From the sequence record MN871441.1: a stretch of DNA of 64,000 nt. One strand, written 5' to 3'. A model generated the notes under the pieces. That model had not been told where the DNA came from. It did no database searches and saw only the letters and a list, made by a program, of their open reading frames with translations. Shown here piece after piece: positions 6,926 through 20,775 of this stretch (position 1 is its first letter; every line of letters starts with the position of its first letter). The position numbers and the translations under genes are program-made.

Positions 6926-7300
6926 TCAATCTCCGTTAAAATGTACGTTCCAAACAGGACGATATTCCCTGATTAGACGTTGTTCGTCTATATCCAACAT
7001 CATACTAGAAGAACGGAAAACATACAACCATAAATTCCCCTTGTTGATAGTCTCTACCATCTTTTTGTTCTTGTCGACATTGGATTGTCTGGCGTTTCTC
7101 CAATTTACACAATTCCTATACGTATCGAATCTCTTCCATAGATCATTTGCTTTACCAATGTAGAGAATTTTAGATCCTCTTACAAATGCGTATACCACAT
7201 TTTGGTAATAAGTTGGGACTAGCATATCCCTTGATAACAAACCCTGATCGTCTAGATACAACTTCGATATCTTCTTAAACCCCGGAAGCATATCATTCAC
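6926..7300 (-). CDS. denA: GIY-YIG endonuclease II (T4 DenA-like)
   Basis: VVYAF...ILYIGKANDLWKRFDTYRN and EQRLIREYRPVWN. Confidence 0.8.
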   Translation of the reverse strand: MNDMLPGFKKISKLYLDDQGLLSRDMLVPTYYQNVVYAFVRGSKILYIGKANDLWKRFDTYRNCVNWRNARQSNVDKNKKMVETINKGNLWLYVFRSSSMMLDIDEQRLIREYRPVWNVHFNGD

Positions 7301-7589
7301 CCTTAAAACTTCTACACATCTTATATTTCACGATCTGATAATTGAGACATGAGGTATAGATTAAATGGATCTCATGGCGAATTGATTGGGTCAGAGGAAT
7401 TTCGACATCTTGTAATTTACAAAATTCAGAATGATAAATTTCCTGAATGTAACCACTANGTGTTAAATCATAAAAAGCCGCCTGCAACGGTTCCTCTATT
7501 TCGTTCTTAGGTAGGTTGTCGAAAATAGACAANGCAGNNACNATACGTTCCTCCATGATTTTAGCAATAATCATTCCATTTTCATTCAT
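7293..7589 (-). CDS. hypothetical protein
   Basis: overlap-coupled ORF. Confidence 0.55.
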   Translation of the reverse strand: MNENGMIIAKIMEERXXXXLSIFDNLPKNEIEEPLQAAFYDLTXSGYIQEIYHSEFCKLQDVEIPLTQSIRHEIHLIYTSCLNYQIVKYKMCRSFKGE

Positions 7590-7909
7590 ACAACATTTTT
7601 CAGTATCATGGAAATATTAAAATTTACCAATTCCAAAGTATATTGTTCATAAATCCAATAATACAAATCATCAACGTTAACATTCGGGTATAATTTTAAT
7701 ACTTCATCGCTAATTTCATCTATAACCTGATCGGTTGGTTTATAGATATAAAATAGTTTTGATAACTCGATGACAAATTTTTCATTGTCCTCAATGGCGT
7801 TCAATTCCGATTTGTGCTTTTCCATTCTGGTTCGAACGTGCTCATCAATAATAGGGAGTATATCCCTTGATTCCACACTATATTCACCAGACTCTCTTGA
7901 AAATTTCAT
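7586..7909 (-). CDS. hypothetical protein
   Basis: overlap-coupled ORF. Confidence 0.65.
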   Translation of the reverse strand: MKFSRESGEYSVESRDILPIIDEHVRTRMEKHKSELNAIEDNEKFVIELSKLFYIYKPTDQVIDEISDEVLKLYPNVNVDDLYYWIYEQYTLELVNFNISMILKNVV

Positions 7910-8379
7910 TTTAGCATCCTTATAGCCTCTTTGGCTTTTTCAGAAGACAACCCCTCTCTATGGATCTTTACCAAATGACTATGNTCATATCGAAGGTCAT
8001 CAATAATAACGTATTTCTCAACACCCCTAACTTTAGCATACTCTTCTGCACAAGTAAACCGATATTCACCACCACCTGTATAGCCGATTACCCCATCTAG
8101 TTTAAGACCGGTGATTTCAGTGAAAACTGTAGAACCAACACAGTCAACAACACCACCCCGAAACCAAGAAGAGATCCCGATTAGTTTAACGTCGTCATAA
8201 GCTCTCAGAACGTCGTACAGGTTGTTTAACATCCATGGACATATAAGGTATATGATTCCATCAACAACCTCCCATACCGCTTCTGACGAGACATATGACG
8301 ACGTTTGGTTTGTGTGGGTAACCTCCGAAGTTTCGTAGTTATTCAGAGGCCCATCAACATCTAAGAAAACGTATCTCAT
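7906..8379 (-). CDS. HAD-superfamily phosphatase, RNA-repair (Swiss Army Knife HAD) type
   Basis: FLDVDGPLN motif I, ISSWFR, YVIIDD motif IV. Confidence 0.8.
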   Translation of the reverse strand: MRYVFLDVDGPLNNYETSEVTHTNQTSSYVSSEAVWEVVDGIIYLICPWMLNNLYDVLRAYDDVKLIGISSWFRGGVVDCVGSTVFTEITGLKLDGVIGYTGGGEYRFTCAEEYAKVRGVEKYVIIDDLRYXHSHLVKIHREGLSSEKAKEAIRMLK

Positions 8380-9038
8380 ACAAGAACCTGTGCGGCAAGG
8401 ATCGCTGAATGGCGCTTTAACTTGGTTTCCAAAGATTCGAATTTATACCAATCAGTCCATCGTGTCATTTCTTTACTTCCAACAGTACCAGTAAACCAAT
8501 CTGTGATTAAAGGTGGATTATAAAATCCAGTGGAAATACTCATCCTAATNTTATGACAAAAGTAGAAAGTCGCGTAAAAGGTANTTTCTGAACCTAATTT
8601 CAAAGACCAGACTTTGGTTGCTAAAAAGAACTCAGTCATCTCAAAATGTGCATCTGGTACGAAGGATTTAATAAAATATTTCTTATGGTCGAATTCCACA
8701 TCAACCAATGTCTTGTAAAGGTCGGATGCTACTTCAACCAACTCGCTTAGGTTAACTTTCCAACAATGTCCGAGGTCAATTACCCCGATATATGCGGGTG
8801 TAATATTTTTGTTTAAAATATTGAGAATTCGCTTCCCAGAATCTGTTTGTGTGATGATAAAATCATAATCCCATAGACTGAAAATTGGAGCGCGGTTTAC
8901 TGATTTTAGTTTTGATTCTATCGCTCGAACGTAAGACGATTCATGGTTCATCATACTTTTGATACCAGCCATAGCAAGAGATAGACAGATCGGATAACCA
9001 AAATAGTCCGCAGTATCTTTATGNANTTGNGTGTACAT
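8376..9038 (-). CDS. hypothetical protein
   Basis: 220 aa ORF, start in N-rich block. Confidence 0.6.
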   Translation of the reverse strand: MYXQXHKDTADYFGYPICLSLAMAGIKSMMNHESSYVRAIESKLKSVNRAPIFSLWDYDFIITQTDSGKRILNILNKNITPAYIGVIDLGHCWKVNLSELVEVASDLYKTLVDVEFDHKKYFIKSFVPDAHFEMTEFFLATKVWSLKLGSEXTFYATFYFCHXIRMSISTGFYNPPLITDWFTGTVGSKEMTRWTDWYKFESLETKLKRHSAILAAQVLV

Positions 9039-9409
9039 TTTTATTCCTCGTCGTANANNGGTTCAACAANNANNGATTTNCCNTANTNNGTNAANCCNTN
9101 TTNGGTNCTATANACCATNTNNTTNAGATTNNNNTTTANCCAANNGGTTTTTTGTTCTGTGGTGTACANTCATCCCACNNNCTCATCNANNNAGTCANNA
9201 TNNCANTTCTGNANGTNATAAACNTCNACNGGTTTNTNGTATTTNNNTTCCATGNANGAAATGGACACGNNNANANCGAAGACTTATCATNNTNGGTTGG
9301 GANGATCCAGTTNTCNACNTCACCATNNTNCANNATTNAGNGNAACTATTAGGGTAACCGTGTNNACATNNNTTTTCATGNNATGNCTCCTNNTANNTTC
9401 TATANANNT

Positions 9410-9449
9410 ANGATACAGAAAAGCCGAAAGCGTGTCAACACTTTCGGCT
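9410..9449 (-). promoter_or_regulatory. terminator hairpin overlapping an early promoter
   Basis: AGCCGAAAG/CTTTCGGCT stem plus T-tract after td; TTGACA in the loop, N17, TATCNT. Confidence 0.65.
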
Positions 9450-9455
9450 AGATTT

Positions 9456-10328
9456 TTAAGCAGCAAACGGAATATCTAGTTTTCCGTTATGAAGATAACC
9501 ATCAATTGTTACAATATCGTAAACTTTGTTCTTTTCATCAAGNACATAGTTNANATCNACACANTTNTCGTCAAANACCAACACNGGGTTGTTNAGTGGG
9601 TGTGGTTCTCGTTTCAAAAACTCTTCACATGCAGCAAATTGATTTTCGTAAATGTGAACGTTGTTCATAACATGGGTAACCTTCCCAACCTTATGACCAG
9701 TAATCTTAGCCATCAGTTCTAGGAAAAACCATGCTTGGAGCATATTGGCGGGGCCACCTAGAAGGATGTCAGTGCTACGTTGATACGACGTGAGATGAAG
9801 GGTATCACCGATAAGCTGGAACTGGTGCATCATCATACAAGGACGCAAACAACCTTCTTCGAACCGAGAAGGATCCCAAAAGGTAATGATCTCCCCGCGA
9901 TTATCAATACCAGCTTTTAGATCTTCATACACATCCAAAAGTAGGTCGTATTCCCCGCCCATGTTACCAAAGTCGCGAGCGATTGCACCATAGACATTAC
10001 CCATATCATCCTCACCCAGTCGGTTTGGATTGGCTAACCATGCTTTGGTCTCATTTGCGTTGGCATCCCATGTACGAGTTCCGAGATCACGAAATTGCTT
10101 TGCGCTTGTATATCCTCTCAGATAACCAACAAACTCAGCGATAAACATCTTGAAGAAAACATGTTTATGAGAAATCATCGGACAACGGTCATAAACCATA
10201 ACATGAGTTGGGATAGTTCGACAAACATATCCAGTACGAGAGTTAAAGATGTCGTGACCAGATTCAAAAACATTCTTTACTAGATTGTAATATTCTGATT
10301 CGTACTTACCTTGTGGGAGTAATGTCAT
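9456..10328 (-). CDS. td: thymidylate synthase
   Basis: TWDANAN, GCLRPCMMMHQF catalytic Cys, YQRSTDILLGGPAN, HIYENQ; no intron. Confidence 0.95.
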   Translation of the reverse strand: MTLLPQGKYESEYYNLVKNVFESGHDIFNSRTGYVCRTIPTHVMVYDRCPMISHKHVFFKMFIAEFVGYLRGYTSAKQFRDLGTRTWDANANETKAWLANPNRLGEDDMGNVYGAIARDFGNMGGEYDLLLDVYEDLKAGIDNRGEIITFWDPSRFEEGCLRPCMMMHQFQLIGDTLHLTSYQRSTDILLGGPANMLQAWFFLELMAKITGHKVGKVTHVMNNVHIYENQFAACEEFLKREPHPXNNXVLXFDXXCXDXNYXLDEKNKVYDIVTIDGYLHNGKLDIPFAA

Positions 10329-12372: not shown

Positions 12373-12401
12373 ATATTACAAAAGTTGGGACGTGAAATCA
12401 A
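12373..12401 (-). promoter_or_regulatory. sigma70-like early promoter
   Basis: TTGATT-N17-TAATAT. Confidence 0.6.
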
Positions 12402-13378
12402 CCAATTTTTGAAAATAAATCCAGTACAGCAGATGTTTTTGCTTTCGCTTCAACTTCTAGACAACCCAAACCAGACAGGATTTTAGCTTGTTGGATGACC
12501 ATAGGATCATCAATATAATCGCTATGTGCGCGGGATACTTTGTCTACTTCACGGCTTTGTGAAACGTGGAAAAACGGTTTTTGGTTTCTCCAAGTGGAAA
12601 GGATTCGTTCAAACGTAGATGAATCAACATCCAAAAATTCACCGGTCATAACAAGATGGTGATGACAGTCATACAACATTTTTATACCATATTTTTCACA
12701 AATAAGCAACGTATTTTGGGTGTCCCCCGTGAAGATCTTACCGTTTTTATCGCTATTCTCAAATGAGAGCCAAGGAATAAGATCCGAATATTGACCATTA
12801 TCAAGTTCCGGGAGATGTTCTAAGTTGCCTTCAAGATGAATATTAATACAAGATTTGTCTGATGTAGTCAACCGTTCCATAAAATATTTGTGATACATGA
12901 GGGTAGCAAAAGATTGATTTCTGGTATCTTCNCCGACAGAATTGATGATAACAAACTGNTCCGGGTGAGTAGATATCACGATACCGTTTGAATCNATTAC
13001 TTTTTTGCAACGATTTAGCAACATGTCCACANCGGATAACATATCCACATCGTAAAGAGACCCTAACACTGGGTGGTCAAACAACGGAAGTAGATCTGAA
13101 CTAATCCGCAGAGCATGACATTCAGTTGGCATACCAGACACAAAAACCAGTTGGTTGTACAAAGCATTTAGATTTTGTTTAACTTTAGGCATCAGCTTTG
13201 CCTTTAGTTTAATAGAATTTTTAGATACCACATCCAATGTAAGGAGTGACGGGTCGTCAATCCCACATATCTGCATCATACTTTTTCTGGTAACCGTACC
13301 CATTTTTGTATCTTTATGAGCGGTAAAAGTTGATTTAGACTTATCGAAAATACCAGTCATACATACAGTACCAAGCAT
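12398..13378 (-). CDS. uvsE: UV damage endonuclease (UvsE/UVDE family)
   Basis: RISSDLLPLFDHP, ISTHPxQF, FENSDK, YDCHHH, RAHSDYI, EVEAKAK. Confidence 0.9.
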   Translation of the reverse strand: MLGTVCMTGIFDKSKSTFTAHKDTKMGTVTRKSMMQICGIDDPSLLTLDVVSKNSIKLKAKLMPKVKQNLNALYNQLVFVSGMPTECHALRISSDLLPLFDHPVLGSLYDVDMLSXVDMLLNRCKKVXDSNGIVISTHPXQFVIINSVXEDTRNQSFATLMYHKYFMERLTTSDKSCINIHLEGNLEHLPELDNGQYSDLIPWLSFENSDKNGKIFTGDTQNTLLICEKYGIKMLYDCHHHLVMTGEFLDVDSSTFERILSTWRNQKPFFHVSQSREVDKVSRAHSDYIDDPMVIQQAKILSGLGCLEVEAKAKTSAVLDLFSKIG

Positions 13379-13799: not shown

Positions 13800-15351
13800 T
13801 TACAGACCAGCCAGNGCACGAGCTTGGATGTCTTTCCAGATTTGGAAGTTAACAATCTTACCNTCACGGAAAGCAAGTTTCANTTCNCCTTGGTTGAACT
13901 CATCAGCGGTTTGGTTCTCGAAAAGAACATAATCACCATCNACNTTNTCAACCCGCAGACGACCCCGAGCGGANTTCTTACTGTTCAACGCAGTTTTCGG
14001 GTTCTTCTGCATGGAGATATCAATTCCATCAACGATGGAGTGAGTACCCTTGATTGCAATAGAGAAGCTATCGCGAGAAGCATTCTTGAGGAAACCCCAA
14101 CTACCAGTACCCATCAGTACGTTGGAAACACACCAGCCAGCAGCAGCCATACCAGCATAGATCTTCTCTTGCAGTTCACCGTCAATCGCTTCACCGTAGA
14201 TGATACCAACTTTCGGATTCAGAACACGAAAACCCTTCTCGTTCACAGTACCACCAAAAATATCCCACAGGATTTGCAGAGACCCTTTACGTTCGTTCTC
14301 ATCTTCTGCTTCCGGGTCACCCATGATCACCTCGTAAGGAGTCTTNCGGGTTCTTCTGCATGGAGATATCAATTCCATCAACGATGGAGTGAGTACCCTT
14401 GATTGCAATAGAGAAGCTATCGCGAGAAGCATTCNNNAGGNNACNCCNACTACCAGACNATNATACGTNGNNNACNNNCCGCCANCACTATCCGCAACGT
14501 AACTCAGGATCCCGGTCGGATAAGTTTCTGTGAACAGACGGCGGAGGCTTTCACGTTCTGCATGTTCAAAGCCCAAGACCACGGAAATAAGCGATACGCT
14601 GGCAAGTAACCGCATGTTCTGTTGCATTTACAGAACAACCAATCAGTTCATTGTCACTGTCAGCACCATAGTAGTCTTCGAGGTAATCGATAGCCCAACC
14701 AGTGTCAGTACCTGCACTAAAAAGAAGCTGACCCATACCAGAGATTGTAGCATCTTCGATGCCACGATGTCCACGAGCGGCGAAACAATGATTAGCAATC
14801 AATACCCAAAAATCGTTAGCCCCTGTAATAGGTGCCCACTTAGCGGAAGTTTTACGATACTGACTTGATACCATCGCGGCGTTACTCATAGGCCACACCA
14901 TCGCACTGAGATAAGTTTCGAGATAGTTTACCAACCAGAAATAATCAGGGTGTGTGTTATTCACAACAAACACAGGGACACCCATATTAACCCAGTTACC
15001 CTCTTCAATTGCACGCACTTCAATCGGCATATATCCAAGGTCATGAAGATCCGATAGGTTTTTGGTCATTACATCGCCGTAGTCCTTACCAATGGAGTTC
15101 TTCACCCGACGAACAAACCGTTTGATTACTTTATCTTTTGATTTGCGGAAGAAGTTTTGATCCCATTGCTCTACCAGATGTTGGAGTGCATATTGCAGAC
15201 CGAAGAATACCATCTTACCGTTGGAATCCAAAACGTTAGCATATTTGTCACTTCTGGGGGTCATATTAGAATATACATACGAAGTATTATCAATATACAT
15301 TTCGGCGTGAGCCCACTTATAAAAGTCGGAGGTCATATGTGGATATTTCAT
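13800..15351 (-). CDS. nadV: nicotinamide phosphoribosyltransferase-like protein (Nampt/NadV; candidate Namat), frame broken in this assembly
   Basis: SDFYKWAH, YSNMTPRS, ARGHRG, ATEHAV, SYVADS, IIYGEAI, RDSFSIAIK, KxSARGRL; 1-nt shift near 14570 and misplaced duplicate at 14347-14434. Confidence 0.88.
13998..14434. repeat. 88-bp direct duplication inside the Nampt-like gene
   Basis: 13998-14085 identical to 14347-14434 (offset 349). Confidence 0.85.
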
Positions 15352-15402
15352 TTTCTCATTTCCTAAATAGATTAAAGGGATATTTTATAACAAGGTTTAT
15401 TT

Positions 15403-16386
15403 ATGATTGATGAATTCAGTGGAACCAAGTTCCAAACACCAACCGGTAGTATATTAACAGTTAATCATATAGTTGGCAAGCAACAACGAAGGAAACTATA
15501 CGATGTAAGTTGTTCGGTATGCTCTGTAGATAAAGAGTTATATCCAGATGGATTTAAATTATCCAAACCAGATCTAACTAGAGGTAGAATCCCATGTGGG
15601 TGTTCTAAAAAACCTCAGTTATCTGAACAACAATATACTATCATAGTGAAACGTATATGTAAAGAGAAAAACTACAAATTTATAGGCTTTATTGGTGGAT
15701 ACAAAAATAAAAACACAAAAGTTGTTTACGAGTGTCCGTATCATGGCATTCAAGATACAACAAGTTATGACAATTTCGTTAACAAATCTAATGGGTGTAG
15801 AAAATGTGCTCATAGTGAGTTGATTGAATCCAAGAGAAACAAGGATTATATAACCAACGTATTAGGTATTTGTCAAACAGAAAATTACGAATTCATCGGA
15901 TATCAAAACGGATACAAAAATAAGAATTCTAAGTTCGACTATATATGCAAAACACACAACCAGAGTTTTAACGTCAGTTACGATTCGTTTGTTAATGCGG
16001 GATGTCGAGCTACATGTTGTAATTCTAACTATGGTGGATTCAAACGTGATAAACCAGCAATACTTTACGTTGTTAAATGGTCTAATAAGTCTAGATCTTG
16101 GATTAAGTTTGGTATAACCAACCACACAGAAACCCCAGAAATTAGGTTTGAACAACAGAAAGAAGTACACCACAACAAAACAGGTGGTGTACTAAAATAT
16201 ACACCACTATACATAACTGAACCAACTGACGGAGAAATTATTTTTCAGTTGGAAACCACAGTTAGTAATCTAAAACAAAAATATGGTAATGCTTGTACAA
16301 AATCTGATATGACCGACGGTTATACAGAAACATTACCATTAGAATCATATAGTGACATTATGGATATCATAAAAGGCGAGGACTAA
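15403..16386 (+). mobile_element. free-standing homing endonuclease (Cys-rich Zn-ribbon repeats + C-terminal GIY-YIG-like domain)
   Basis: CSVC/PCGC, CPYHG..CRKC repeats; LYVVKW..IKFGITN..RFEQQ..GYTE; only plus-strand gene. Confidence 0.75.
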
Positions 16387-16521
16387 GGTTCTTGCCTTTT
16401 TCAATNNAACNACCATCNTTGTAAGAATGAANCACCAAATCACCAACTATATTATATCCAATACTTTCGAGCGTAATGTCGATTATTTTTGTCATAACCC
16501 GTCCGGGGGTTTGCCATTTAT

Positions 16522-16719
16522 TCATTTAATCATACCTACATACTCTTTAGCAAGCCTAATTGCCTCATCTTTAGATTGTACCGTTACGTTTGGTTTATTC
16601 TTGTCACACGAACCACCACCGTAATAGTAACGAACATCAAACATACCATATTCGTTACTAAGTACGCAAGCTTTTTTATATACGTCATCATACCAACGAT
16701 TATCAAATTTCCAGATCAT
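16522..16719 (-). CDS. hypothetical protein
   Basis: overlap-coupled ORF. Confidence 0.6.
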   Translation of the reverse strand: MIWKFDNRWYDDVYKKACVLSNEYGMFDVRYYYGGGSCDKNKPNVTVQSKDEAIRLAKEYVGMIK

Positions 16720-16955
16720 ACAGTTTTAACCCACAAATGTTGATTGTCTCTAACAAATCCATATATTTTTTGTTCTACTGGGGACAAATTTAGACAACGT
16801 TCCATCTCTTCATCGGACCACATTTTTTCTATTTCAACACCAACGCCACGAATTACAATTTTGTGGATATCTATATAAGTTTTCTTTGTCCGTTTGTGTT
16901 CGTTCATAATGTGTGCGAAAGCATCACATAGATATTTCATGTCAATTGGTTGCAT
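16716..16955 (-). CDS. hypothetical protein
   Basis: tiling ORF. Confidence 0.6.
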   Translation of the reverse strand: MQPIDMKYLCDAFAHIMNEHKRTKKTYIDIHKIVIRGVGVEIEKMWSDEEMERCLNLSPVEQKIYGFVRDNQHLWVKTV

Positions 16956-16957
16956 AG

Positions 16958-17200
16958 TTATTTTTCCTTATTGGGTATATGAATCAAAACACCACAACCA
17001 CAGTTTGGGCATACTGGTAGCTTACGCTTTAAGGTATCATTATACTTCCAATTGGCGGTTTTTATGAAATCGGACAAACCAAGAATATATGTAGTCCCAC
17101 ATCGAAAGCAAGTATTTTCCTGTTCACGAAGATAAGGACTNNACCATTTTATGTCTTTANTCANCAAAACTACNGTCAATACANNNNACTCATNTTTCAA
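16958..17200 (-). CDS. Zn-ribbon protein
   Basis: CFRC and CPNC. Confidence 0.6.
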   Translation of the reverse strand: MKXEXXVLXVVLXXKDIKWXSPYLREQENTCFRCGTTYILGLSDFIKTANWKYNDTLKRKLPVCPNCGCGVLIHIPNKEK

Positions 17201-17445
17201 TCGNTCNNCACNNGATGAAACCCGCCGTTTNGCTGACANCTACCGANANTATCACGACCAGTATCAATGATTTCGATATCATTTTCTTCCGAACGGAACC
17301 ANTCATGATATNGNTCAAACATCCGGATCNGGTNTACCTTTTTCACTTCGTCCATTGGAATTTCACCAATAATCTTGATGGTGATNGGTTGATATGATTC
17401 GTGACAGTCTTCTTTCTTCAATACATATGTAATTGAATTAATCAT
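17197..17445 (-). CDS. hypothetical protein
   Basis: tiling ORF, N-rich. Confidence 0.5.
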   Translation of the reverse strand: MINSITYVLKKEDCHESYQXITIKIIGEIPMDEVKKVXXIRMFXXYHXWFRSEENDIEIIDTGRDXXGXCQXNGGFHXVXXD

Positions 17446-17620
17446 TTCTTTTCTCCAAAACAGAGAGTACCGATAGCCAGATTATGAACAAGNTTCTTGA
17501 NCCCTTCTTCGTTCATCCCATTCGCCTTTTCTCGCATCAACATTTCCTGAACAGATTGGTTAGCCAGAAGTTCATCGATACGGGNGTTNATGATTTGGGT
17601 CATAGTTTCGATACTCATCA
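17442..17620 (-). CDS. hypothetical protein
   Basis: MMSIETMTQ... ORF after prs; start approximate. Confidence 0.5.
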
Positions 17621-17631
17621 TGTTTAGTTCC

Positions 17632-18429
17632 TTATTTTGTCCAGTCGAAACGAGTATATACGTTGTCGATGTACTGTGCAAGGTTTTCTTTGGCGTTGTA
17701 AGAAAAAATTCCATGGGTAACAAACAGGTCNACNCGNNNCGCACCAGACTCTTTCAATACTTTACCAAGATTNAGGAAAGAACGNCCACCATCACAAATA
17801 TCGTCTACGATCAACAACCGCTTACCTTTGACGTCAGCATTGAAACGAGGTTCGCTAACTTCACCAGTGTTGATGTCACGAGTCTTCATGGCTTCAATTA
17901 CAGGTAGTCCCGCACTTTGAGCTTGAGGATAAATCTTTTTCAGAGCACCTGCATCTGGGGATACAATAGCATCATAATTACGACGGGAAATCCCTTGAGA
18001 ACCCCAACAACACTGTTTGTTAACAAATACGTTATTGATCAATGCGGTTGCTACATCGGAATGTGGATCGGTGAGACAAACCAAATCATATTTCATTGAG
18101 TTAATAAAATCACAAAAGACACGCAAAGACAGGCTTTCACCTACTGNCATAACTCGGTCTTGTCGAGCATAAGGGAGATAGGATAGGTCCAAAACGTATC
18201 GCACACCAGTCCCGAAGAATCGGTGAAGTGCATCCGTAAGGATCGCCAGTTTCATGATATCGCCATCGTGGATACTTGCATCAACACGAACAGTATCTGC
18301 CTCATAAGCCCCATATTCAATAACATCTTTTGGAAGTTTGACGTTCCATTCNCCACCAGCAAACTGTTTAAAATCTACAATTGCATGATTGATATTGAAG
18401 TCTTTATAAGTAACAAATAATTTATACAT
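17632..18429 (-). CDS. prs: ribose-phosphate pyrophosphokinase-like protein (candidate Adps)
   Basis: YLPYARQDRV, DPHSDV, VSPDAGA, KTRD, LIVDDICDG, VTHGIFS. Confidence 0.92.
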   Translation of the reverse strand: MYKLFVTYKDFNINHAIVDFKQFAGXEWNVKLPKDVIEYGAYEADTVRVDASIHDGDIMKLAILTDALHRFFGTGVRYVLDLSYLPYARQDRVMXVGESLSLRVFCDFINSMKYDLVCLTDPHSDVATALINNVFVNKQCCWGSQGISRRNYDAIVSPDAGALKKIYPQAQSAGLPVIEAMKTRDINTGEVSEPRFNADVKGKRLLIVDDICDGXRSFXNLGKVLKESGAXXXDLFVTHGIFSYNAKENLAQYIDNVYTRFDWTK

Positions 18430-18827
18430 TAGATAATCCTCATTGAAATTATGTCGGAGTTTAGGACGAGATATTCCCCTTCCCGTTTCAAGATCCTAAG
18501 TAGAATCTTTCTGTACGGTTCATAATCACAGAACTTGTGGATCATGAACCTGATGTTATCGATTGAAAGGATTGGAACTGCTTCTACTTCATATGTGTGT
18601 CCATCGTCTGTCTTCTGGAAGTATGACCCAACAGACCGAGCCGTTTTAGCACAAGAAGAAAAGCTATTCATCGTGTGATCATCGTGTGGATTCTTAGACG
18701 ACCACCTATACAAAATACACGGTTTATTATTAAATTTTTCTTTCGCATAGTCAACAAGAATTTTAACTTCGTCGTCGGATACGGGGAGTCCGTCAAGGTA
18801 ACGGAACAAAACAGAATGTGGGGTCAA
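18429..18827 (-). CDS. putative R-S-E type ADP-ribosyltransferase
   Basis: LYR41, S55-F-S57..A63, E116-G-E118-YLV; TTG start overlapping NADAR stop, TAATG overlap with prs. Confidence 0.55.
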   Translation of the reverse strand: MTPHSVLFRYLDGLPVSDDEVKILVDYAKEKFNNKPCILYRWSSKNPHDDHTMNSFSSCAKTARSVGSYFQKTDDGHTYEVEAVPILSIDNIRFMIHKFCDYEPYRKILLRILKREGEYLVLNSDIISMRII

Positions 18828-19273
18828 AGTTGTTCTCTAATCTCGTTCAAAATGTCACAAAACTCTTTTTCCGTCAGAATTGTGATGTGTGGATCCTTAC
18901 AACCCATAGTATGGGCCAATATATGCGGTTTTGAGTGTACCAGAGCCTCTAGGAATGATTTGTTCTGTTCGGCCATTGAAAGGTATGCGTTATACAAAAG
19001 ATTGCTATACGCTTCACTGAGACGGTTTACAGGCTTTCCTTTATACCACATAGTAAGGTCTTTCTGCCACCCCCTATTAGAATGACAAACCTTATAAACT
19101 TCATGACCCCTCAAATTGTTTATGTCCGGGGGGTTTTCATATTTGAGGCTTTGTAGGAAAGCCTCAATCGTCCGATAATACACACCGTCGAATGTAAATG
19201 GGTGTTCTGTGAAGTTTGACAACTCACGTTCAATCCAATCCCGGCTCCCGGAATAGATGTCAATGATTGCCAT
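18824..19273 (-). CDS. 30.3: NADAR family protein (T4 gp30.3-like)
   Basis: LSNFTEHPF..DG..Y..IEAFLQSLK and TILTEKEFCDIL match T4 30.3 as recalled. Confidence 0.85.
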   Translation of the reverse strand: MAIIDIYSGSRDWIERELSNFTEHPFTFDGVYYRTIEAFLQSLKYENPPDINNLRGHEVYKVCHSNRGWQKDLTMWYKGKPVNRLSEAYSNLLYNAYLSMAEQNKSFLEALVHSKPHILAHTMGCKDPHITILTEKEFCDILNEIREQL

Positions 19274-19697
19274 ACTTCTTTACCAGATCATCATAACCAC
19301 CACTGTATCCATAATCTGTGGTCTTGTCAATCTTAACCTCAATTTCTGCACTTTCAAAGTGTTCGAAATATCCCGTTACGAAATCCATATCAATTTTGAT
19401 CCTACCATCAGAGTGATGAATATTCATGGATGAGAAGAAATCGAAAGGATCTTCTACATCCTTGGCCCATGGACGACGAGAAGCCAGATCCTTAACCATT
19501 TCCTGTTTTGCTGGTGTCCAACGTTCGTTGTTGTATGCGTTATAGAACTCATTGAACTCGTAAATCTCAACAAGTGCCTTCATAGCATCATCGTTGTCAA
19601 ACCAAACAGGTGCCAGAATTCGTTCATCGTCGTATGTATTAAAACTATCACCAGTTCTATATTTTACCCTAATAATGAATTTCATACAACACCTCAC
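19260..19697 (-). CDS. hypothetical protein
   Basis: tiling ORF. Confidence 0.65.
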   Translation of the reverse strand: MRCCMKFIIRVKYRTGDSFNTYDDERILAPVWFDNDDAMKALVEIYEFNEFYNAYNNERWTPAKQEMVKDLASRRPWAKDVEDPFDFFSSMNIHHSDGRIKIDMDFVTGYFEHFESAEIEVKIDKTTDYGYSGGYDDLVKKYGNH

Positions 19698-20110
19698 TTG
19701 TAGAAAACGAACGATACGGATTGAAGTTTTCCGCCGGTAACAACTGTTCCGATATCGAAATTTTCTTGTTTGGTCATACTTTCAATAGAGCGACCCATCC
19801 GACAGATTTGTTCAATCATTTTCTCGCCACTATCCGGTTTCTGATGAAATGTAATGACCCATCGAGCAGGAGAAAAGTCATTAGATTCCAGATCCTTGAT
19901 ATTGATTGATACATGTTTATCAAATCCCTTAAGACAGGTTGGTTCATAATACTCGTTCATCTGAACCATACGTTGGAGGGTATTGATGAACTTGTTCATC
20001 CCATACTGGTATCGGAGACCGCTATATTTTCCAAAACCAAGTTTGTTACCAAACACGTCGATCTCGTTTTTAAAAACTTTCTTTGCGTAAGTAGTAATCT
20101 TCATTATCAT
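19694..20110 (-). CDS. hypothetical protein
   Basis: overlap-coupled ORF. Confidence 0.65.
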   Translation of the reverse strand: MIMKITTYAKKVFKNEIDVFGNKLGFGKYSGLRYQYGMNKFINTLQRMVQMNEYYEPTCLKGFDKHVSINIKDLESNDFSPARWVITFHQKPDSGEKMIEQICRMGRSIESMTKQENFDIGTVVTGGKLQSVSFVFYK

Positions 20111-20775
20111 TCCCCAAAATTGGTGTACTTAGATTTGAATTCCATCAGTTTTTCTTTTAAGACTTTTTCTTTCGTAGTGAGGACGTCGATCTCTTTGGAG
20201 ATACTTGACAATTCACCACTCAGACGATTGTATTCATCATTCAAAACTTTGAATGCATCTTCAATTGATGGTGTAGAAACAGATATATGTGGTTCTTTCA
20301 TATCTTGAGATGGCTCTATTGCACCAAACAATTGATCGATGTCGAGGTGAATTTCAAAATCAACATAAGATTCCATATCTTTTCGAATCTGGTGGCGATG
20401 CCAATCTCCAGATGTATGAACTACCAGACTACCAACAACCAGACCATTTGTAACTTGCGCAACGGTAGTAAGTAGGTGATGGATATGACTAGCTACACCA
20501 GTCCTATCCTTTTTGGTATTACCTACTTTAATAACAACGGAATTTGATGAGTGGTCATAATTGCAAGAATAATTAATATGACCATAGACATCAAACGAAG
20601 TTCGTGGGCCATATTCCCTCATTAGATTATGGAGGAATTTTTTGTTTAGGATACGAGCTGTATATGTCGCAGCCTGACGTCCTTTAAGCGGTTTGCGGTT
20701 ATCGTTATATGGGTTTTTATATACATCAACCTCACCACGAAGATACTGATGTACATATTTTACAAATGAGTTCAT
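20107..20775 (-). CDS. hypothetical protein with C-terminal coiled coil
   Basis: 222 aa ORF. Confidence 0.7.
   Translation of the reverse strand: MNSFVKYVHQYLRGEVDVYKNPYNDNRKPLKGRQAATYTARILNKKFLHNLMREYGPRTSFDVYGHINYSCNYDHSSNSVVIKVGNTKKDRTGVASHIHHLLTTVAQVTNGLVVGSLVVHTSGDWHRHQIRKDMESYVDFEIHLDIDQLFGAIEPSQDMKEPHISVSTPSIEDAFKVLNDEYNRLSGELSSISKEIDVLTTKEKVLKEKLMEFKSKYTNFGE

What the first reader, a model, noticed from the sequence alone, without database searches (positions are those of the whole stretch)
13800..19273. Candidate closed ADP-ribose write/erase/recycle circuit: NADAR + ART-like + Adps-like, with Namat-like downstream
Seen: NADAR (19273-18824), an ART-like ORF (18827-18429) and a PRS-like ORF (18429-17632) are chained by TTGA and TAATG stop/start overlaps; a Nampt-like gene lies 2.3 kb further along the same strand. 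Known: ARTs consume NAD+ and release nicotinamide; NADARs release ADP-ribose; NARP1 (PRS-like Adps + Nampt-like Namat) rebuilds NAD+ from ADP-ribose and nicotinamide. Inference: these four genes could form one cycle in which the phage ADP-ribosylates a target, removes the mark (its own or a host DarT mark) and recovers NAD+. I do not know of this coupled arrangement being described.
Basis: partly seen in the sequence, partly recalled or inferred. Interest (0 to 1): 0.85.

Follow-up and report, generated by a model that had tools for sequence, protein, structure and literature searches.

The report
Phage NADAR, NARP1 and possible mini-ART
A T4-like Aeromonas phage places a known DNA de-ADP-ribosylase (AdfN-type NADAR) next to the known NAD+-rebuilding pair Adps/Namat, with an optional small gene between them that carries ADP-ribosyltransferase-like motifs but has no confirmed fold, so this is mostly known counter-defence genes side by side, not a demonstrated closed cycle.

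Summary
The window is Aeromonas phage AsSzw2 (MN871441), a T4-like phage, deposited with many ambiguous bases.

**Observation.** The three chained minus-strand ORFs and their TTGA and TAATG overlaps are exactly as described.

**What each gene is:**
- **19273-18824:** a gp30.3/AdfN-type NADAR. The catalytic Glu, Lys and His are conserved.
- **18429-17632 and the Nampt-like gene:** NARP1 Adps and Namat. Osterman et al. 2024 already list both for this very genome.
- **Namat in this record:** broken by a frameshift, an N-rich stretch and a 113-nt internal duplicate that replaces the catalytic-core codons. This is probably an assembly artefact.
- **Middle ORF (18827-18429):** belongs to a tiny uncharacterised family. 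Its only invariant polar residues form an R..SxS..ExE triad like R-S-E ADP-ribosyltransferases.
  - No HMM library hits an ART family, the AlphaFold models are poor, and Foldseek finds nothing.
  - The profile match to the T4 Mod family is weak (E 0.078).

**Linkage.**
- NADAR-Adps adjacency holds across this phage subfamily.
- The middle gene is optional: absent in Aswh_1, and replaced by an HNH endonuclease in ZPAH1.
- NADAR genes lie near Adps in 8 of 83 viral loci. One unrelated contig has a NADAR inside the Adps-Namat operon.

**Verdict.** Known modules sit side by side, with a plausible ADPR feed into NARP1. The closed write/erase/recycle circuit is unsupported.

The parts
18824..19273 (-). 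gp30.3/AdfN-type NADAR (DNA ADP-ribosylglycohydrolase homologue), 149 aa
   Evidence: Pfam Phage_30_3, E 6.7e-33. 38% identical to T4 gp30.3 over the full length, with T4 E36, K43 and the family His matched by E37, K44 and H121. Homologues are present in 1,512 phage records.
18429..18827 (-). 132-aa protein of an uncharacterised family (phrog_18982) with an R41..S55-x-S57..E116-x-E118 triad; candidate minimal R-S-E ADP-ribosyltransferase, unproven
   Evidence: About 7 clusters in 5.8 billion proteins. The only invariant polar residues are S55, S57, E116 and E118, and R41 is present in every copy. No ART HMM hit. AlphaFold pLDDT 49 and 63. No Foldseek match. hhalign against the T4 Mod family gives E 0.078 with the motifs in register, and 9 of 300 shuffles reach the score.
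17632..18429 (-). Adps (ADP-ribose pyrophosphokinase of NARP1), PRPS-like, 265 aa
   Evidence: Pfam Pribosyl_synth and Pribosyltran_N. Listed as MN871441_00353 with 'Namat within 10 genes: Yes' in Osterman 2024 Table S1. The DDICD PP-loop and the F, R, H, D and K positions reported for Adps are conserved.
16367..17621 (-). Run of five or six small ORFs of unknown function between Adps and Namat (homologues of CC2 gp129-gp133; one zinc ribbon)
   Evidence: tblastn of CC2 proteins against the window. Phage_zn_bind_2 for CC2 gp131. The content varies between relatives.
15403..16386 (+). CapR-domain endonuclease (homing-endonuclease-like insert) on the opposite strand
   Evidence: Pfam CapR, E 1.6e-37, three stretches; phrog_681 'endonuclease'. 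It replaces CC2 gp134 and truncates the gp133 homologue.
14566..15351 (-). Namat (nicotinamide ADP-ribose transferase of NARP1), N-terminal piece, 261 aa
   Evidence: NAMPT_N and phrog_448. Listed as MN871441_00346 'Adps-associated' in Osterman 2024 Table S2. 77% identical to intact CC2 Namat residues 1-256.
13800..14627 (-). Namat C-terminal piece in another frame, containing an N-rich stretch and the duplicated insert
   Evidence: NAPRTase domain. Alignment with intact CC2 shows the frameshift lies within the 14566-14627 overlap and that the native segment is replaced. The CC2 orthologue hits solved SpbetaL1 Namat 9W5X at 9e-97, against 4e-37 for human NAMPT.
14344..14456 (.). 113-nt copy of 13995-14107 sitting where the catalytic-core codons (the R306-equivalent region) should be; likely assembly artefact
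   Evidence: the repeat finder reports the family. The two copies differ only at N positions. CC2 has FVVRPDSS at this place.

Best explanation
This is a counter-defence and NAD-metabolism cluster in the early, hyperplastic region of a T4-like Aeromonas phage. It is made of modules that each work on their own.

1. The gp30.3/AdfN-type NADAR hydrolyses ADP-ribose from guanine in phage DNA, countering DarT1-type toxins. This is inferred from homology to T4 AdfN.
2. Adps pyrophosphorylates free ADP-ribose with ATP, and Namat joins nicotinamide to ADPR-PP to rebuild NAD+ after host NADase effectors fire. This is NARP1, inferred from homology and from published listing of this genome.
3. The 132-aa gene between NADAR and Adps is an optional insert. 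It may be a minimal R-S-E mono-ADP-ribosyltransferase acting on a host target, but that is unproven.

The ADP-ribose released by the NADAR could be taken up by Adps, as has been shown for the RyDEP glycosidase. That would be a side benefit, not an obligatory closed cycle.

In this deposited sequence Namat is disrupted, most likely by sequencing or assembly error.
For: Identity of the phage: 98.8% to MN871441 over 6 kb.

NADAR:
- Pfam Phage_30_3, E 6.7e-33.
- 38% identity to T4 gp30.3, with the catalytic E, K and H conserved.
- T4 gp30.3 is AdfN and has shown DNA ADP-ribosylglycohydrolase and anti-DarTG1 activity (PMC11257639; PMC11125620).

Adps and Namat:
- This genome's proteins are listed in Osterman 2024 Tables S1 and S2.
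- The CC2 orthologue of Namat is far closer to solved Namat 9W5X (9e-97) than to human NAMPT (4e-37).
- The Adps DDICD loop and the acceptor residues are conserved.
- 82 of 83 viral Adps loci have Namat within 7 kb.

The middle gene is optional:
- CC2-type phages and avDM6 have it intact.
- The phage 65 record is frameshifted.
- Aswh_1 has a 17-nt gap instead.
- ZPAH1 has an HNH endonuclease in the slot.
- Its remote homologues lack NADAR and Adps neighbours.

Overlapping junctions are the norm in this region.

NADAR-NARP1 proximity recurs independently. 8 of 83 loci have it, including L066 with Adps, a DrHyd-like gene, NADAR and Namat chained together. The precedent for an ADPR-releasing accessory feeding NARP1 is RyDEP.
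Against: - No activity was measured for any of the four proteins of this phage.
- As deposited, Namat lacks the catalytic-core Arg region. If the sequence is real, NARP1 is dead in this isolate.
- The tight NADAR/middle/Adps chaining and the conserved motif triad could still reflect a functional link that I cannot exclude.
- The rate of NADAR near Adps (8 of 83) was not compared with a whole-genome chance expectation.
Confidence: 0.72

Rival explanations
1. The four genes form one closed cycle. The middle protein ADP-ribosylates a target, consuming NAD+ and releasing nicotinamide. The NADAR removes the mark, releasing ADP-ribose. Adps and Namat then rebuild NAD+ from the two products.
For: - NADAR, the middle ORF and Adps are chained by overlaps.
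- The middle-ORF family conserves an R..SxS..ExE triad and aligns in register with the T4 Mod ARTs.
- NADAR recurs near or inside NARP1 elsewhere.
- The chemistry is stoichiometrically consistent (established knowledge).
Against: - The middle gene is absent or replaced in close relatives that keep NADAR-Adps.
- Its remote homologues sit without NADAR or Adps.
- None of 81 other Adps loci carries it or a Mod-type ART.
- The ART fold is unconfirmed.
- Overlaps are ubiquitous in this region.
- Writing and erasing the same mark is a futile cycle unless the targets differ.
Confidence: 0.08
2. NADAR and the middle ORF form a toxin-antitoxin-like or self-protection pair, as in DarT1-NADAR and YbiA-YarT. 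A small ART would modify host nucleic acid, while the NADAR keeps phage DNA clean. NARP1 would simply be a neighbour.
For: - The gene order (NADAR upstream, small putative ART downstream, with overlap) is the same as in the myxobacterial YbiA-YarT operon.
- NADARs reverse guanine ADP-ribosylation made by R-S-E-type DNA ARTs in vitro.
- T4 AdfN works best in the context of T-even infection.
Against: - gp30.3-type NADARs occur in about 1,500 phage records, whereas the middle-ORF family is tiny.
- Aswh_1 and ZPAH1 keep the NADAR without the middle gene.
- P0006 and P0007 lack a NADAR neighbour.
- ART identity is unproven.
Confidence: 0.1
3. The middle ORF is not an ADP-ribosyltransferase at all. 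It is one of many small early phage proteins of unknown role, and the R/S/E pattern is coincidental.
For: - No hit to any ART model in Pfam (including the Mod family PF26816), NCBIfam or PHROGs.
- Low-confidence AlphaFold models, with the ExE placed at a helix end.
- No Foldseek match.
- hhalign probability below 1%.
- The R-to-S spacing of 14 residues is shorter than the 24 in T4 ModA and ModB.
Against: - All invariant polar residues of a family diverged to about 30% identity are exactly the triad residues.
- Remote members have a literal S-T-S and an ExE followed by three hydrophobic residues.
- An SxS-x5-A pattern is shared with ModA and ModB.
- Only 9 of 300 column shuffles reach the profile score.
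Confidence: 0.4

Closest known systems
NARP1 (Adps + Namat; Osterman et al. 2024; structures 9W5X/9W5W for Namat, Adps structures 2026)
   Same: - A PRPS-like gene with a Nampt-like gene on the same strand within 10 genes.
- The proteins of this very genome are already listed as Adps and as Adps-associated NadV.
- The orthologue is much closer to solved Namat than to Nampt.
- The Adps PP-loop DDICD and the acceptor residues are conserved.
   Different: - The two genes are 2.3 kb apart here, and 1.3-1.5 kb apart in relatives. They are separated by small ORFs and an opposite-strand endonuclease. Most loci have them adjacent; this clade is in the top 7 of 82 by gap.
- The Namat clamp-helix motif is only partly canonical.
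- Namat is disrupted in this record.
T4 gp30.3 = AdfN, anti-DarT factor NADAR (PMC11257639; PMC11125620)
   Same: - Pfam Phage_30_3.
- 38% identity over the full length.
- Catalytic E and K, and the phage-type His, are conserved.
- Single-domain protein of about 150 aa, in a T4-like phage.
   Different: - The genomic position differs. In T4 the gene lies in the gene 30 cluster, without Adps. Here it lies directly upstream of NARP1.
- Activity and host defence target in Aeromonas are untested.
RyDEP within the NARP1 operon of mycobacteriophage DyoEdafos (bioRxiv 10.64898/2026.05.28.727677)
   Same: An ADP-ribose-releasing hydrolase is encoded in or next to NARP1, and its product is the Adps substrate. 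The concept of an accessory enzyme feeding NARP1 is shown experimentally there.
   Different: - RyDEP is a RyR-domain glycosidase acting on the cyclic ADPR signals of Thoeris.
- The enzyme here is a NADAR whose relatives act on ADP-ribosylated guanine in DNA.
- No synergy was tested here.
ART-NADAR toxin-antitoxin pairs (DarT1-NADAR; YbiA-YarT, PMC11125620)
   Same: A NADAR gene is immediately upstream of a small putative ART of 114-132 aa, in one operon.
   Different: - YarT and DarT are H-Y-E/D-type ARTs. The protein here has R-S-E-type motifs and an unconfirmed fold.
- The pairing is not obligate among relatives.
T4 ModA/ModB family of R-S-E ADP-ribosyltransferases (Pfam PF26816)
   Same: - The motifs [LY]-R-[GW], SxS-x5-A and ExE followed by three hydrophobic residues occur in the same order.
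- The S-to-E spacing is similar: 61 against 67 residues.
- hhalign places all three motifs in register.
   Different: - The protein here is 132 aa against about 200 aa.
- The R-to-S spacing is 14 against 24 residues.
- There is no HMM hit to PF26816, and the profile E-value is only 0.078.

Membership tests
NADAR superfamily, phage gp30.3/AdfN subfamily | Match to the Phage_30_3 model above its curated cut-off | tested here: met
   113.9 bits against a cut-off of 36, E 6.7e-33.
NADAR superfamily, phage gp30.3/AdfN subfamily | Catalytic Glu and Lys (T4 E36, K43), and His in place of the Glu/Asp of the last strand | tested here: met
   BLASTP alignment with T4 gp30.3 matches E37, K44 and H121. 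The residues are defined.
NADAR superfamily, phage gp30.3/AdfN subfamily | Removes ADP-ribose from guanine in DNA and counters DarTG1 | not testable with these tools
   Needs an enzyme assay and plaque assays.
NARP1 Adps | PRPS-like two-domain protein with a Namat homologue within 10 genes | tested here: met
   Pfam hits. Namat lies 8 ORFs downstream. Listed 'Yes' in Osterman Table S1.
NARP1 Adps | Adps-type acceptor and donor residues (F18, R87, H121, D161, K185, D212-D213-I214-C215-D216 PP loop) | tested here: met
   F23, R89, H123, D159, K182 and D209-D210-I211-C212 are invariant in five diverse Adps including this clade, followed here by D213. Positions were matched by motif, not by direct alignment to the solved protein, which is not in the PDB copy.
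NARP1 Adps | Makes ADPR-PP from ADPR and ATP, not PRPP | not testable with these tools
   Needs LC-MS assays.
NARP1 Namat | Closer to experimentally defined Namat than to Nampt | tested here: met
   The intact CC2 orthologue is 77-82% identical to the window pieces. It hits 9W5X at 9e-97, against 4e-37 for human NAMPT. 9W5X is SpbetaL1 Namat.
NARP1 Namat | [quoted passage not shown] | tested here: inconclusive
   The window reads GSWGFLKNASRD. W is at position 3, F at 5 and K at 7, with one extra residue before SRD.
NARP1 Namat | Intact reading frame containing the catalytic-core Arg (SpbetaL1 R306) | tested here: not met
   In this record the gene has a frameshift and the segment is replaced. 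Intact copies exist in CC2 and other relatives. The break is probably an artefact of a low-quality consensus.
R-S-E ADP-ribosyltransferases (e.g. T4 Mod family) | Conserved Arg, Ser-x-Ser and Glu-x-Glu in that order | tested here: met
   R41, S55/S57 and E116/E118. S55, S57, E116 and E118 are invariant across 8 sequences down to 34% identity to the window protein. The apparent loss of R in phage 65 is a frameshift in that record.
R-S-E ADP-ribosyltransferases (e.g. T4 Mod family) | Significant sequence or profile match to a known ART family | tested here: not met
   No Pfam, NCBIfam or PHROG ART hit for any of 8 members. hhalign gives E 0.078 and probability below 1%, and 9 of 300 shuffles reach the score.
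R-S-E ADP-ribosyltransferases (e.g. T4 Mod family) | ART fold with an NAD+ pocket | tested here: inconclusive
   Best model has pLDDT 62.8 and pTM 0.60, with the motif regions at low confidence. No Foldseek hit at E of 0.001 or better apart from the protein's own copy in phage AS-zj.
ART-NADAR toxin-antitoxin pairs | The two genes co-occur as a unit | tested here: not met
   NADAR occurs without the middle gene in Aswh_1 and ZPAH1. Middle-ORF homologues P0006 and P0007 occur without a NADAR.

The most novel reading that the evidence does not exclude
The 132-aa protein founds a new minimal R-S-E ADP-ribosyltransferase family. Its mark, perhaps on guanine in host nucleic acid, is erased from phage DNA by the adjacent AdfN-type NADAR. 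NARP1 then recovers NAD+ from the released ADP-ribose and nicotinamide. In CC2-type phages the three functions would form a phage-run ADP-ribosylation cycle.
Probability: 0.08. Interest if true: 0.8.

Novelty: new variant of a known kind. Interest (0 to 1): 0.38.

Why it matters
The core genes (AdfN-type NADAR, Adps, Namat) are known, and two of them are already catalogued for this genome. The cluster itself is therefore not a discovery. Two points could still be useful.

- **NADAR next to NARP1.** NADAR genes sit next to or inside NARP1 in several unrelated phages. One contig chains Adps, a DrHyd-like gene, a NADAR and Namat. This suggests NADARs may act as accessory enzymes that turn ADP-ribose adducts or derivatives into Adps substrate. 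That would extend the RyDEP principle, and it is directly testable in vitro.
- **The small gene family.** The small family between NADAR and Adps has exactly the residues expected of an R-S-E ADP-ribosyltransferase in a 132-aa frame. If it is active, it would be one of the smallest enzymes of that clade and a new phage effector.

Tried and rejected
- **Fold evidence for the middle ORF.** Two AlphaFold2 runs (5-sequence and 8-sequence alignments) gave pLDDT 49 and 63. Foldseek against the PDB and BFVD found nothing significant. The best non-self hit was an unnamed 225-aa viral protein at E 0.15. A T4-like 'RNA polymerase-ADP-ribosyltransferase' appeared only at E 3.
- **Sequence evidence for the middle ORF.** Pfam, NCBIfam and PHROGs on all 8 family members, and a profile search of PDB sequences, gave no ART.
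- **Expanding the family.** Two word-indexed searches and one full HMMER scan of 1.84 billion representatives found only 7 clusters, plus one odd repeat protein.
- **Fusion idea dropped.** I briefly read negative Adps-Namat distances as fused proteins. A domain check showed no ORF hit by both models. The negative values come from overlapping stop-to-stop ORFs, so the idea was dropped.
- **Promoter and terminator scan.** Counts were at chance level and gave no operon boundaries.
- **Mod-type ARTs.** A search of the window and of 83 Adps loci found none.
- **NADAR detection.** A NADAR model built only from gp30.3-type sequences missed the PF08719-type NADARs near Adps. This was corrected by iterating from the L078 hit.

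Full report
**Source and quality of the sequence**

The 6-kb region matches Aeromonas phage AsSzw2 (MN871441.1) at 98.8% over its whole length. It matches fourteen other records of related Aeromonas phages (AS-zj, Assk, CC2 and others) at 90-95%. These are T4-like phages of the Straboviridae, subfamily Emmerichvirinae. The record is unannotated and of low consensus quality. The window holds 1,051 ambiguous bases in 702 runs, which appear as X in many translations.

**Observation**

The three chained ORFs exist exactly as stated:
- NADAR-like, 19273-18824.
- A 132-aa ORF, 18827-18429, starting at TTG.
- PRS-like, 18429-17632.

The junctions read CTT-TGA over TTG-ACC, and ATC-TAA over ATG. CC2 has the same TTG start and the same overlaps.

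Such overlaps are not specific evidence of coupling. In the annotated CC2 region, 11 of 27 consecutive junctions overlap, and 8 more have gaps of 10 nt or less.

The Nampt-like gene begins 2,280 nt downstream at 15351, but in this record it is not one ORF.
- A frameshift within the 14566-14627 overlap splits it.
- Downstream, an N-rich stretch is followed by a 113-nt copy (14344-14456) of the gene's own later sequence (13995-14107). The two copies differ only at N positions.
- This copy replaces the native codons, which in CC2 include the FVVRPDSS catalytic-core segment.

Intact copies exist in CC2 and in other relatives. I consider the disruption most likely an assembly artefact, but it cannot be settled without reads.

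Between the PRS-like and Nampt-like genes lie five or six small ORFs and a plus-strand CapR-domain endonuclease gene (15403-16386). That gene replaces CC2 gp134.

**NADAR**

- The 149-aa protein matches Pfam Phage_30_3 at E 6.7e-33.
- It aligns over its full length with T4 gp30.3 at 38% identity.
- T4 gp30.3 has been renamed AdfN. It is a NADAR-fold DNA ADP-ribosylglycohydrolase that is necessary and sufficient for T-even resistance to DarTG1, with E36 and K43 essential (PMC11257639).
- Phage NADARs carry a His where other NADARs have Glu or Asp (PMC11125620).
- The window protein has E37, K44 and H121 at the aligned positions.
- Homologues occur in 1,512 phage records, mostly T4-like.

**Adps and Namat**

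- The PRS-like protein hits the PRPS domains.
- It carries the DDICD PP-loop and the F, R, H, D and K positions described for Adps.
- Osterman et al. 2024 list this very protein (MN871441_00353) as having Namat within ten genes. They also list the N-terminal Namat piece (MN871441_00346) as 'Adps-associated'.
- The intact CC2 orthologue hits SpbetaL1 Namat (9W5X/9W5W) at 9e-97, against 4e-37 for human NAMPT.
- The clamp-helix signature GS-X-phi-X-phi-X-phi-TRD is only partly met. The window reads GSWGFLKNASRD.

So NARP1 here is a known system that was already catalogued for this genome.

**The middle ORF**

The family is very small.
- It has no Pfam, NCBIfam or annotated PHROG match.
- There are four close clusters, the phage 65 copy, and two remote members, P0006 and P0007 (29-31% identical to the window protein in local alignments). 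These came from a scan of 1.84 billion representatives.

Evidence in favour of an ART:
- In the alignment, the only invariant polar residues are S55, S57, E116 and E118. R41 is present in all full-length members.
- The apparent loss of R41 in phage 65 is a frameshift in that record, exactly at LYR|W.
- The remote members read YRW/YRF, STS, and EKE/EQE followed by three hydrophobic residues. An SxS-x5-A pattern is shared with T4 ModA and ModB.
- hhalign against ModA and ModB, and against a nine-member Mod family profile, aligns all three motifs in register.

Evidence that stays weak or negative:
- The hhalign scores are E 0.14 and 0.078, with probability below 1%. In a column-shuffle control, 9 of 300 shuffles reach the observed score.
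- Two AlphaFold2 models are poor (pLDDT 49 and 63). The S and E motif regions have the lowest confidence.
- Foldseek against the PDB and BFVD returns nothing significant.

I rate 'ART-like' as plausible, roughly even odds, but unproven.

**Linkage**

Within the Emmerichvirinae, NADAR-Adps adjacency is kept in every lineage examined, but the slot between the two genes varies:

| Phage | Content of the slot between NADAR and Adps |
|---|---|
| CC2-type phages | middle ORF, intact |
| avDM6 | middle ORF, intact but unannotated |
| phage 65 | middle ORF, frameshifted in the record |
| Aswh_1 | empty (17 nt) |
| ZPAH1 | HNH endonuclease |

The remote homologues P0006 and P0007 sit among small early-type ORFs, with no NADAR or Adps within reach.

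I surveyed 83 diverse viral Adps loci with 7-kb flanks.
- 82 carry Namat, usually adjacent. The Aeromonas clade's 1.3-1.5 kb separation is among the seven largest.
- Only the two Aeromonas loci carry the gp30.3-type NADAR and the middle ORF.
- A broader NADAR model finds PF08719-type NADARs within 7 kb in six further loci.
- In contig L066 the order is Adps, a Nuc_deoxyri_tr2 (DrHyd-like) protein, NADAR, Namat. The first and last junctions overlap by 4 nt and the middle gap is 3 nt.

I did not compute a whole-genome chance expectation for the 8-of-83 figure. The in-operon case is the stronger argument.

**Interpretation**

The best-supported reading is a set of independently acting counter-defence modules placed together in an early hyperplastic region:
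- an AdfN-type NADAR against DarT1-type DNA ADP-ribosylation;
- NARP1 against NAD+-depleting effectors;
- an optional small gene that may be a minimal ART.

The erase-to-recycle link is chemically reasonable, because NADAR releases ADP-ribose and Adps uses it. It has a published parallel in RyDEP, a glycosidase inside a NARP1 operon whose product is converted to NAD+ by Adps and Namat in vitro. Iyer et al. 2022 had already remarked that phage NADARs occur in neighbourhoods with NAD+ salvage genes, and that in T4-like phages they are early genes expressed along with ARTs. No paper in the searchable library couples NADAR with NARP1 explicitly.

The 'write' arm, and therefore the closed circuit, lacks support. 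The candidate writer is facultative, and its fold is unconfirmed.

An alternative is that NADAR and the small protein form a toxin-antitoxin-like pair, as in YbiA-YarT, which has the same gene order. This is weakened by the same presence/absence data.

**Novelty and score**

The components are known, and NARP1 is already listed for this genome. What is new is modest:
- an uncharacterised, possibly ART-like family inserted at the NADAR-Adps junction;
- independent examples of NADAR embedded in or near NARP1.

I file it as a new variant of a known kind, with moderate interest.

Noticed in passing
L066:6938-10265 (IMGVR_UViG_3300045919_000631, 109-kb contig): An unrelated phage contig chains Adps (6938-7816), a Nuc_deoxyri_tr2/DrHyd-like protein (7813-8280), a PF08719 NADAR (8284-8751) and Namat (8748-10265). 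Two ADP-ribose-derivative-processing genes therefore sit inside a NARP1 operon.
   Followed up: partly
window 15403-16386 (+): A CapR-domain (three stretches) and DUF723 endonuclease gene lies on the opposite strand between Adps and Namat. It replaces CC2 gp134 and truncates the gp133 homologue. Similar plus-strand genes of about 320 aa sit at this place in Aswh_1, ZPAH1 and avDM6. It looks like a homing-endonuclease insert.
   Followed up: partly
L099:10181-10759 (Aeromonas phage ZPAH1): An HNH endonuclease gene occupies the slot between the NADAR and Adps, exactly where CC2-type phages have the 132-aa ORF. In Aswh_1 the slot is empty. This junction is a hot spot for inserts.
   Followed up: yes
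L100:6662-7084 (Aeromonas phage avDM6) and L002:6951-7356 (phage 65): avDM6 has an intact but unannotated copy of the middle ORF. The phage 65 record has it in two frames, with the shift at LYR|W, and the phage 65 Namat is also annotated in two pieces. This suggests sequencing errors in that older record.
   Followed up: partly
window 12398-13378 (-): A UvdE-type UV-damage endonuclease (Pfam UvdE, E 2.7e-30), conserved in CC2 and phage 65. It lies two genes downstream of Namat.
   Followed up: no
window, whole; densest at 36-38 kb, 30-32 kb and 54-56 kb: 1,051 ambiguous bases in 702 short runs are scattered through the window. This points to a low-quality consensus. Any frameshift or odd repeat in this record should be treated with caution.
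   Followed up: partly
P0008 (177 aa, metagenomic protein): A weak hit (E 5e-4) to the middle-ORF profile. It consists of three tandem copies of a roughly 58-aa unit resembling the R..S motif region (…FHRWPTSSPMPFDRELNSESNT…). Its origin and meaning are unknown.
   Followed up: no
window 19260-20775 (-): Three conserved ORFs of unknown function lie directly upstream of the NADAR (phrog_10176, phrog_17881, phrog_24551) and are chained by overlaps. They are conserved in all Emmerichvirinae relatives examined and have no Pfam hits.
   Followed up: no
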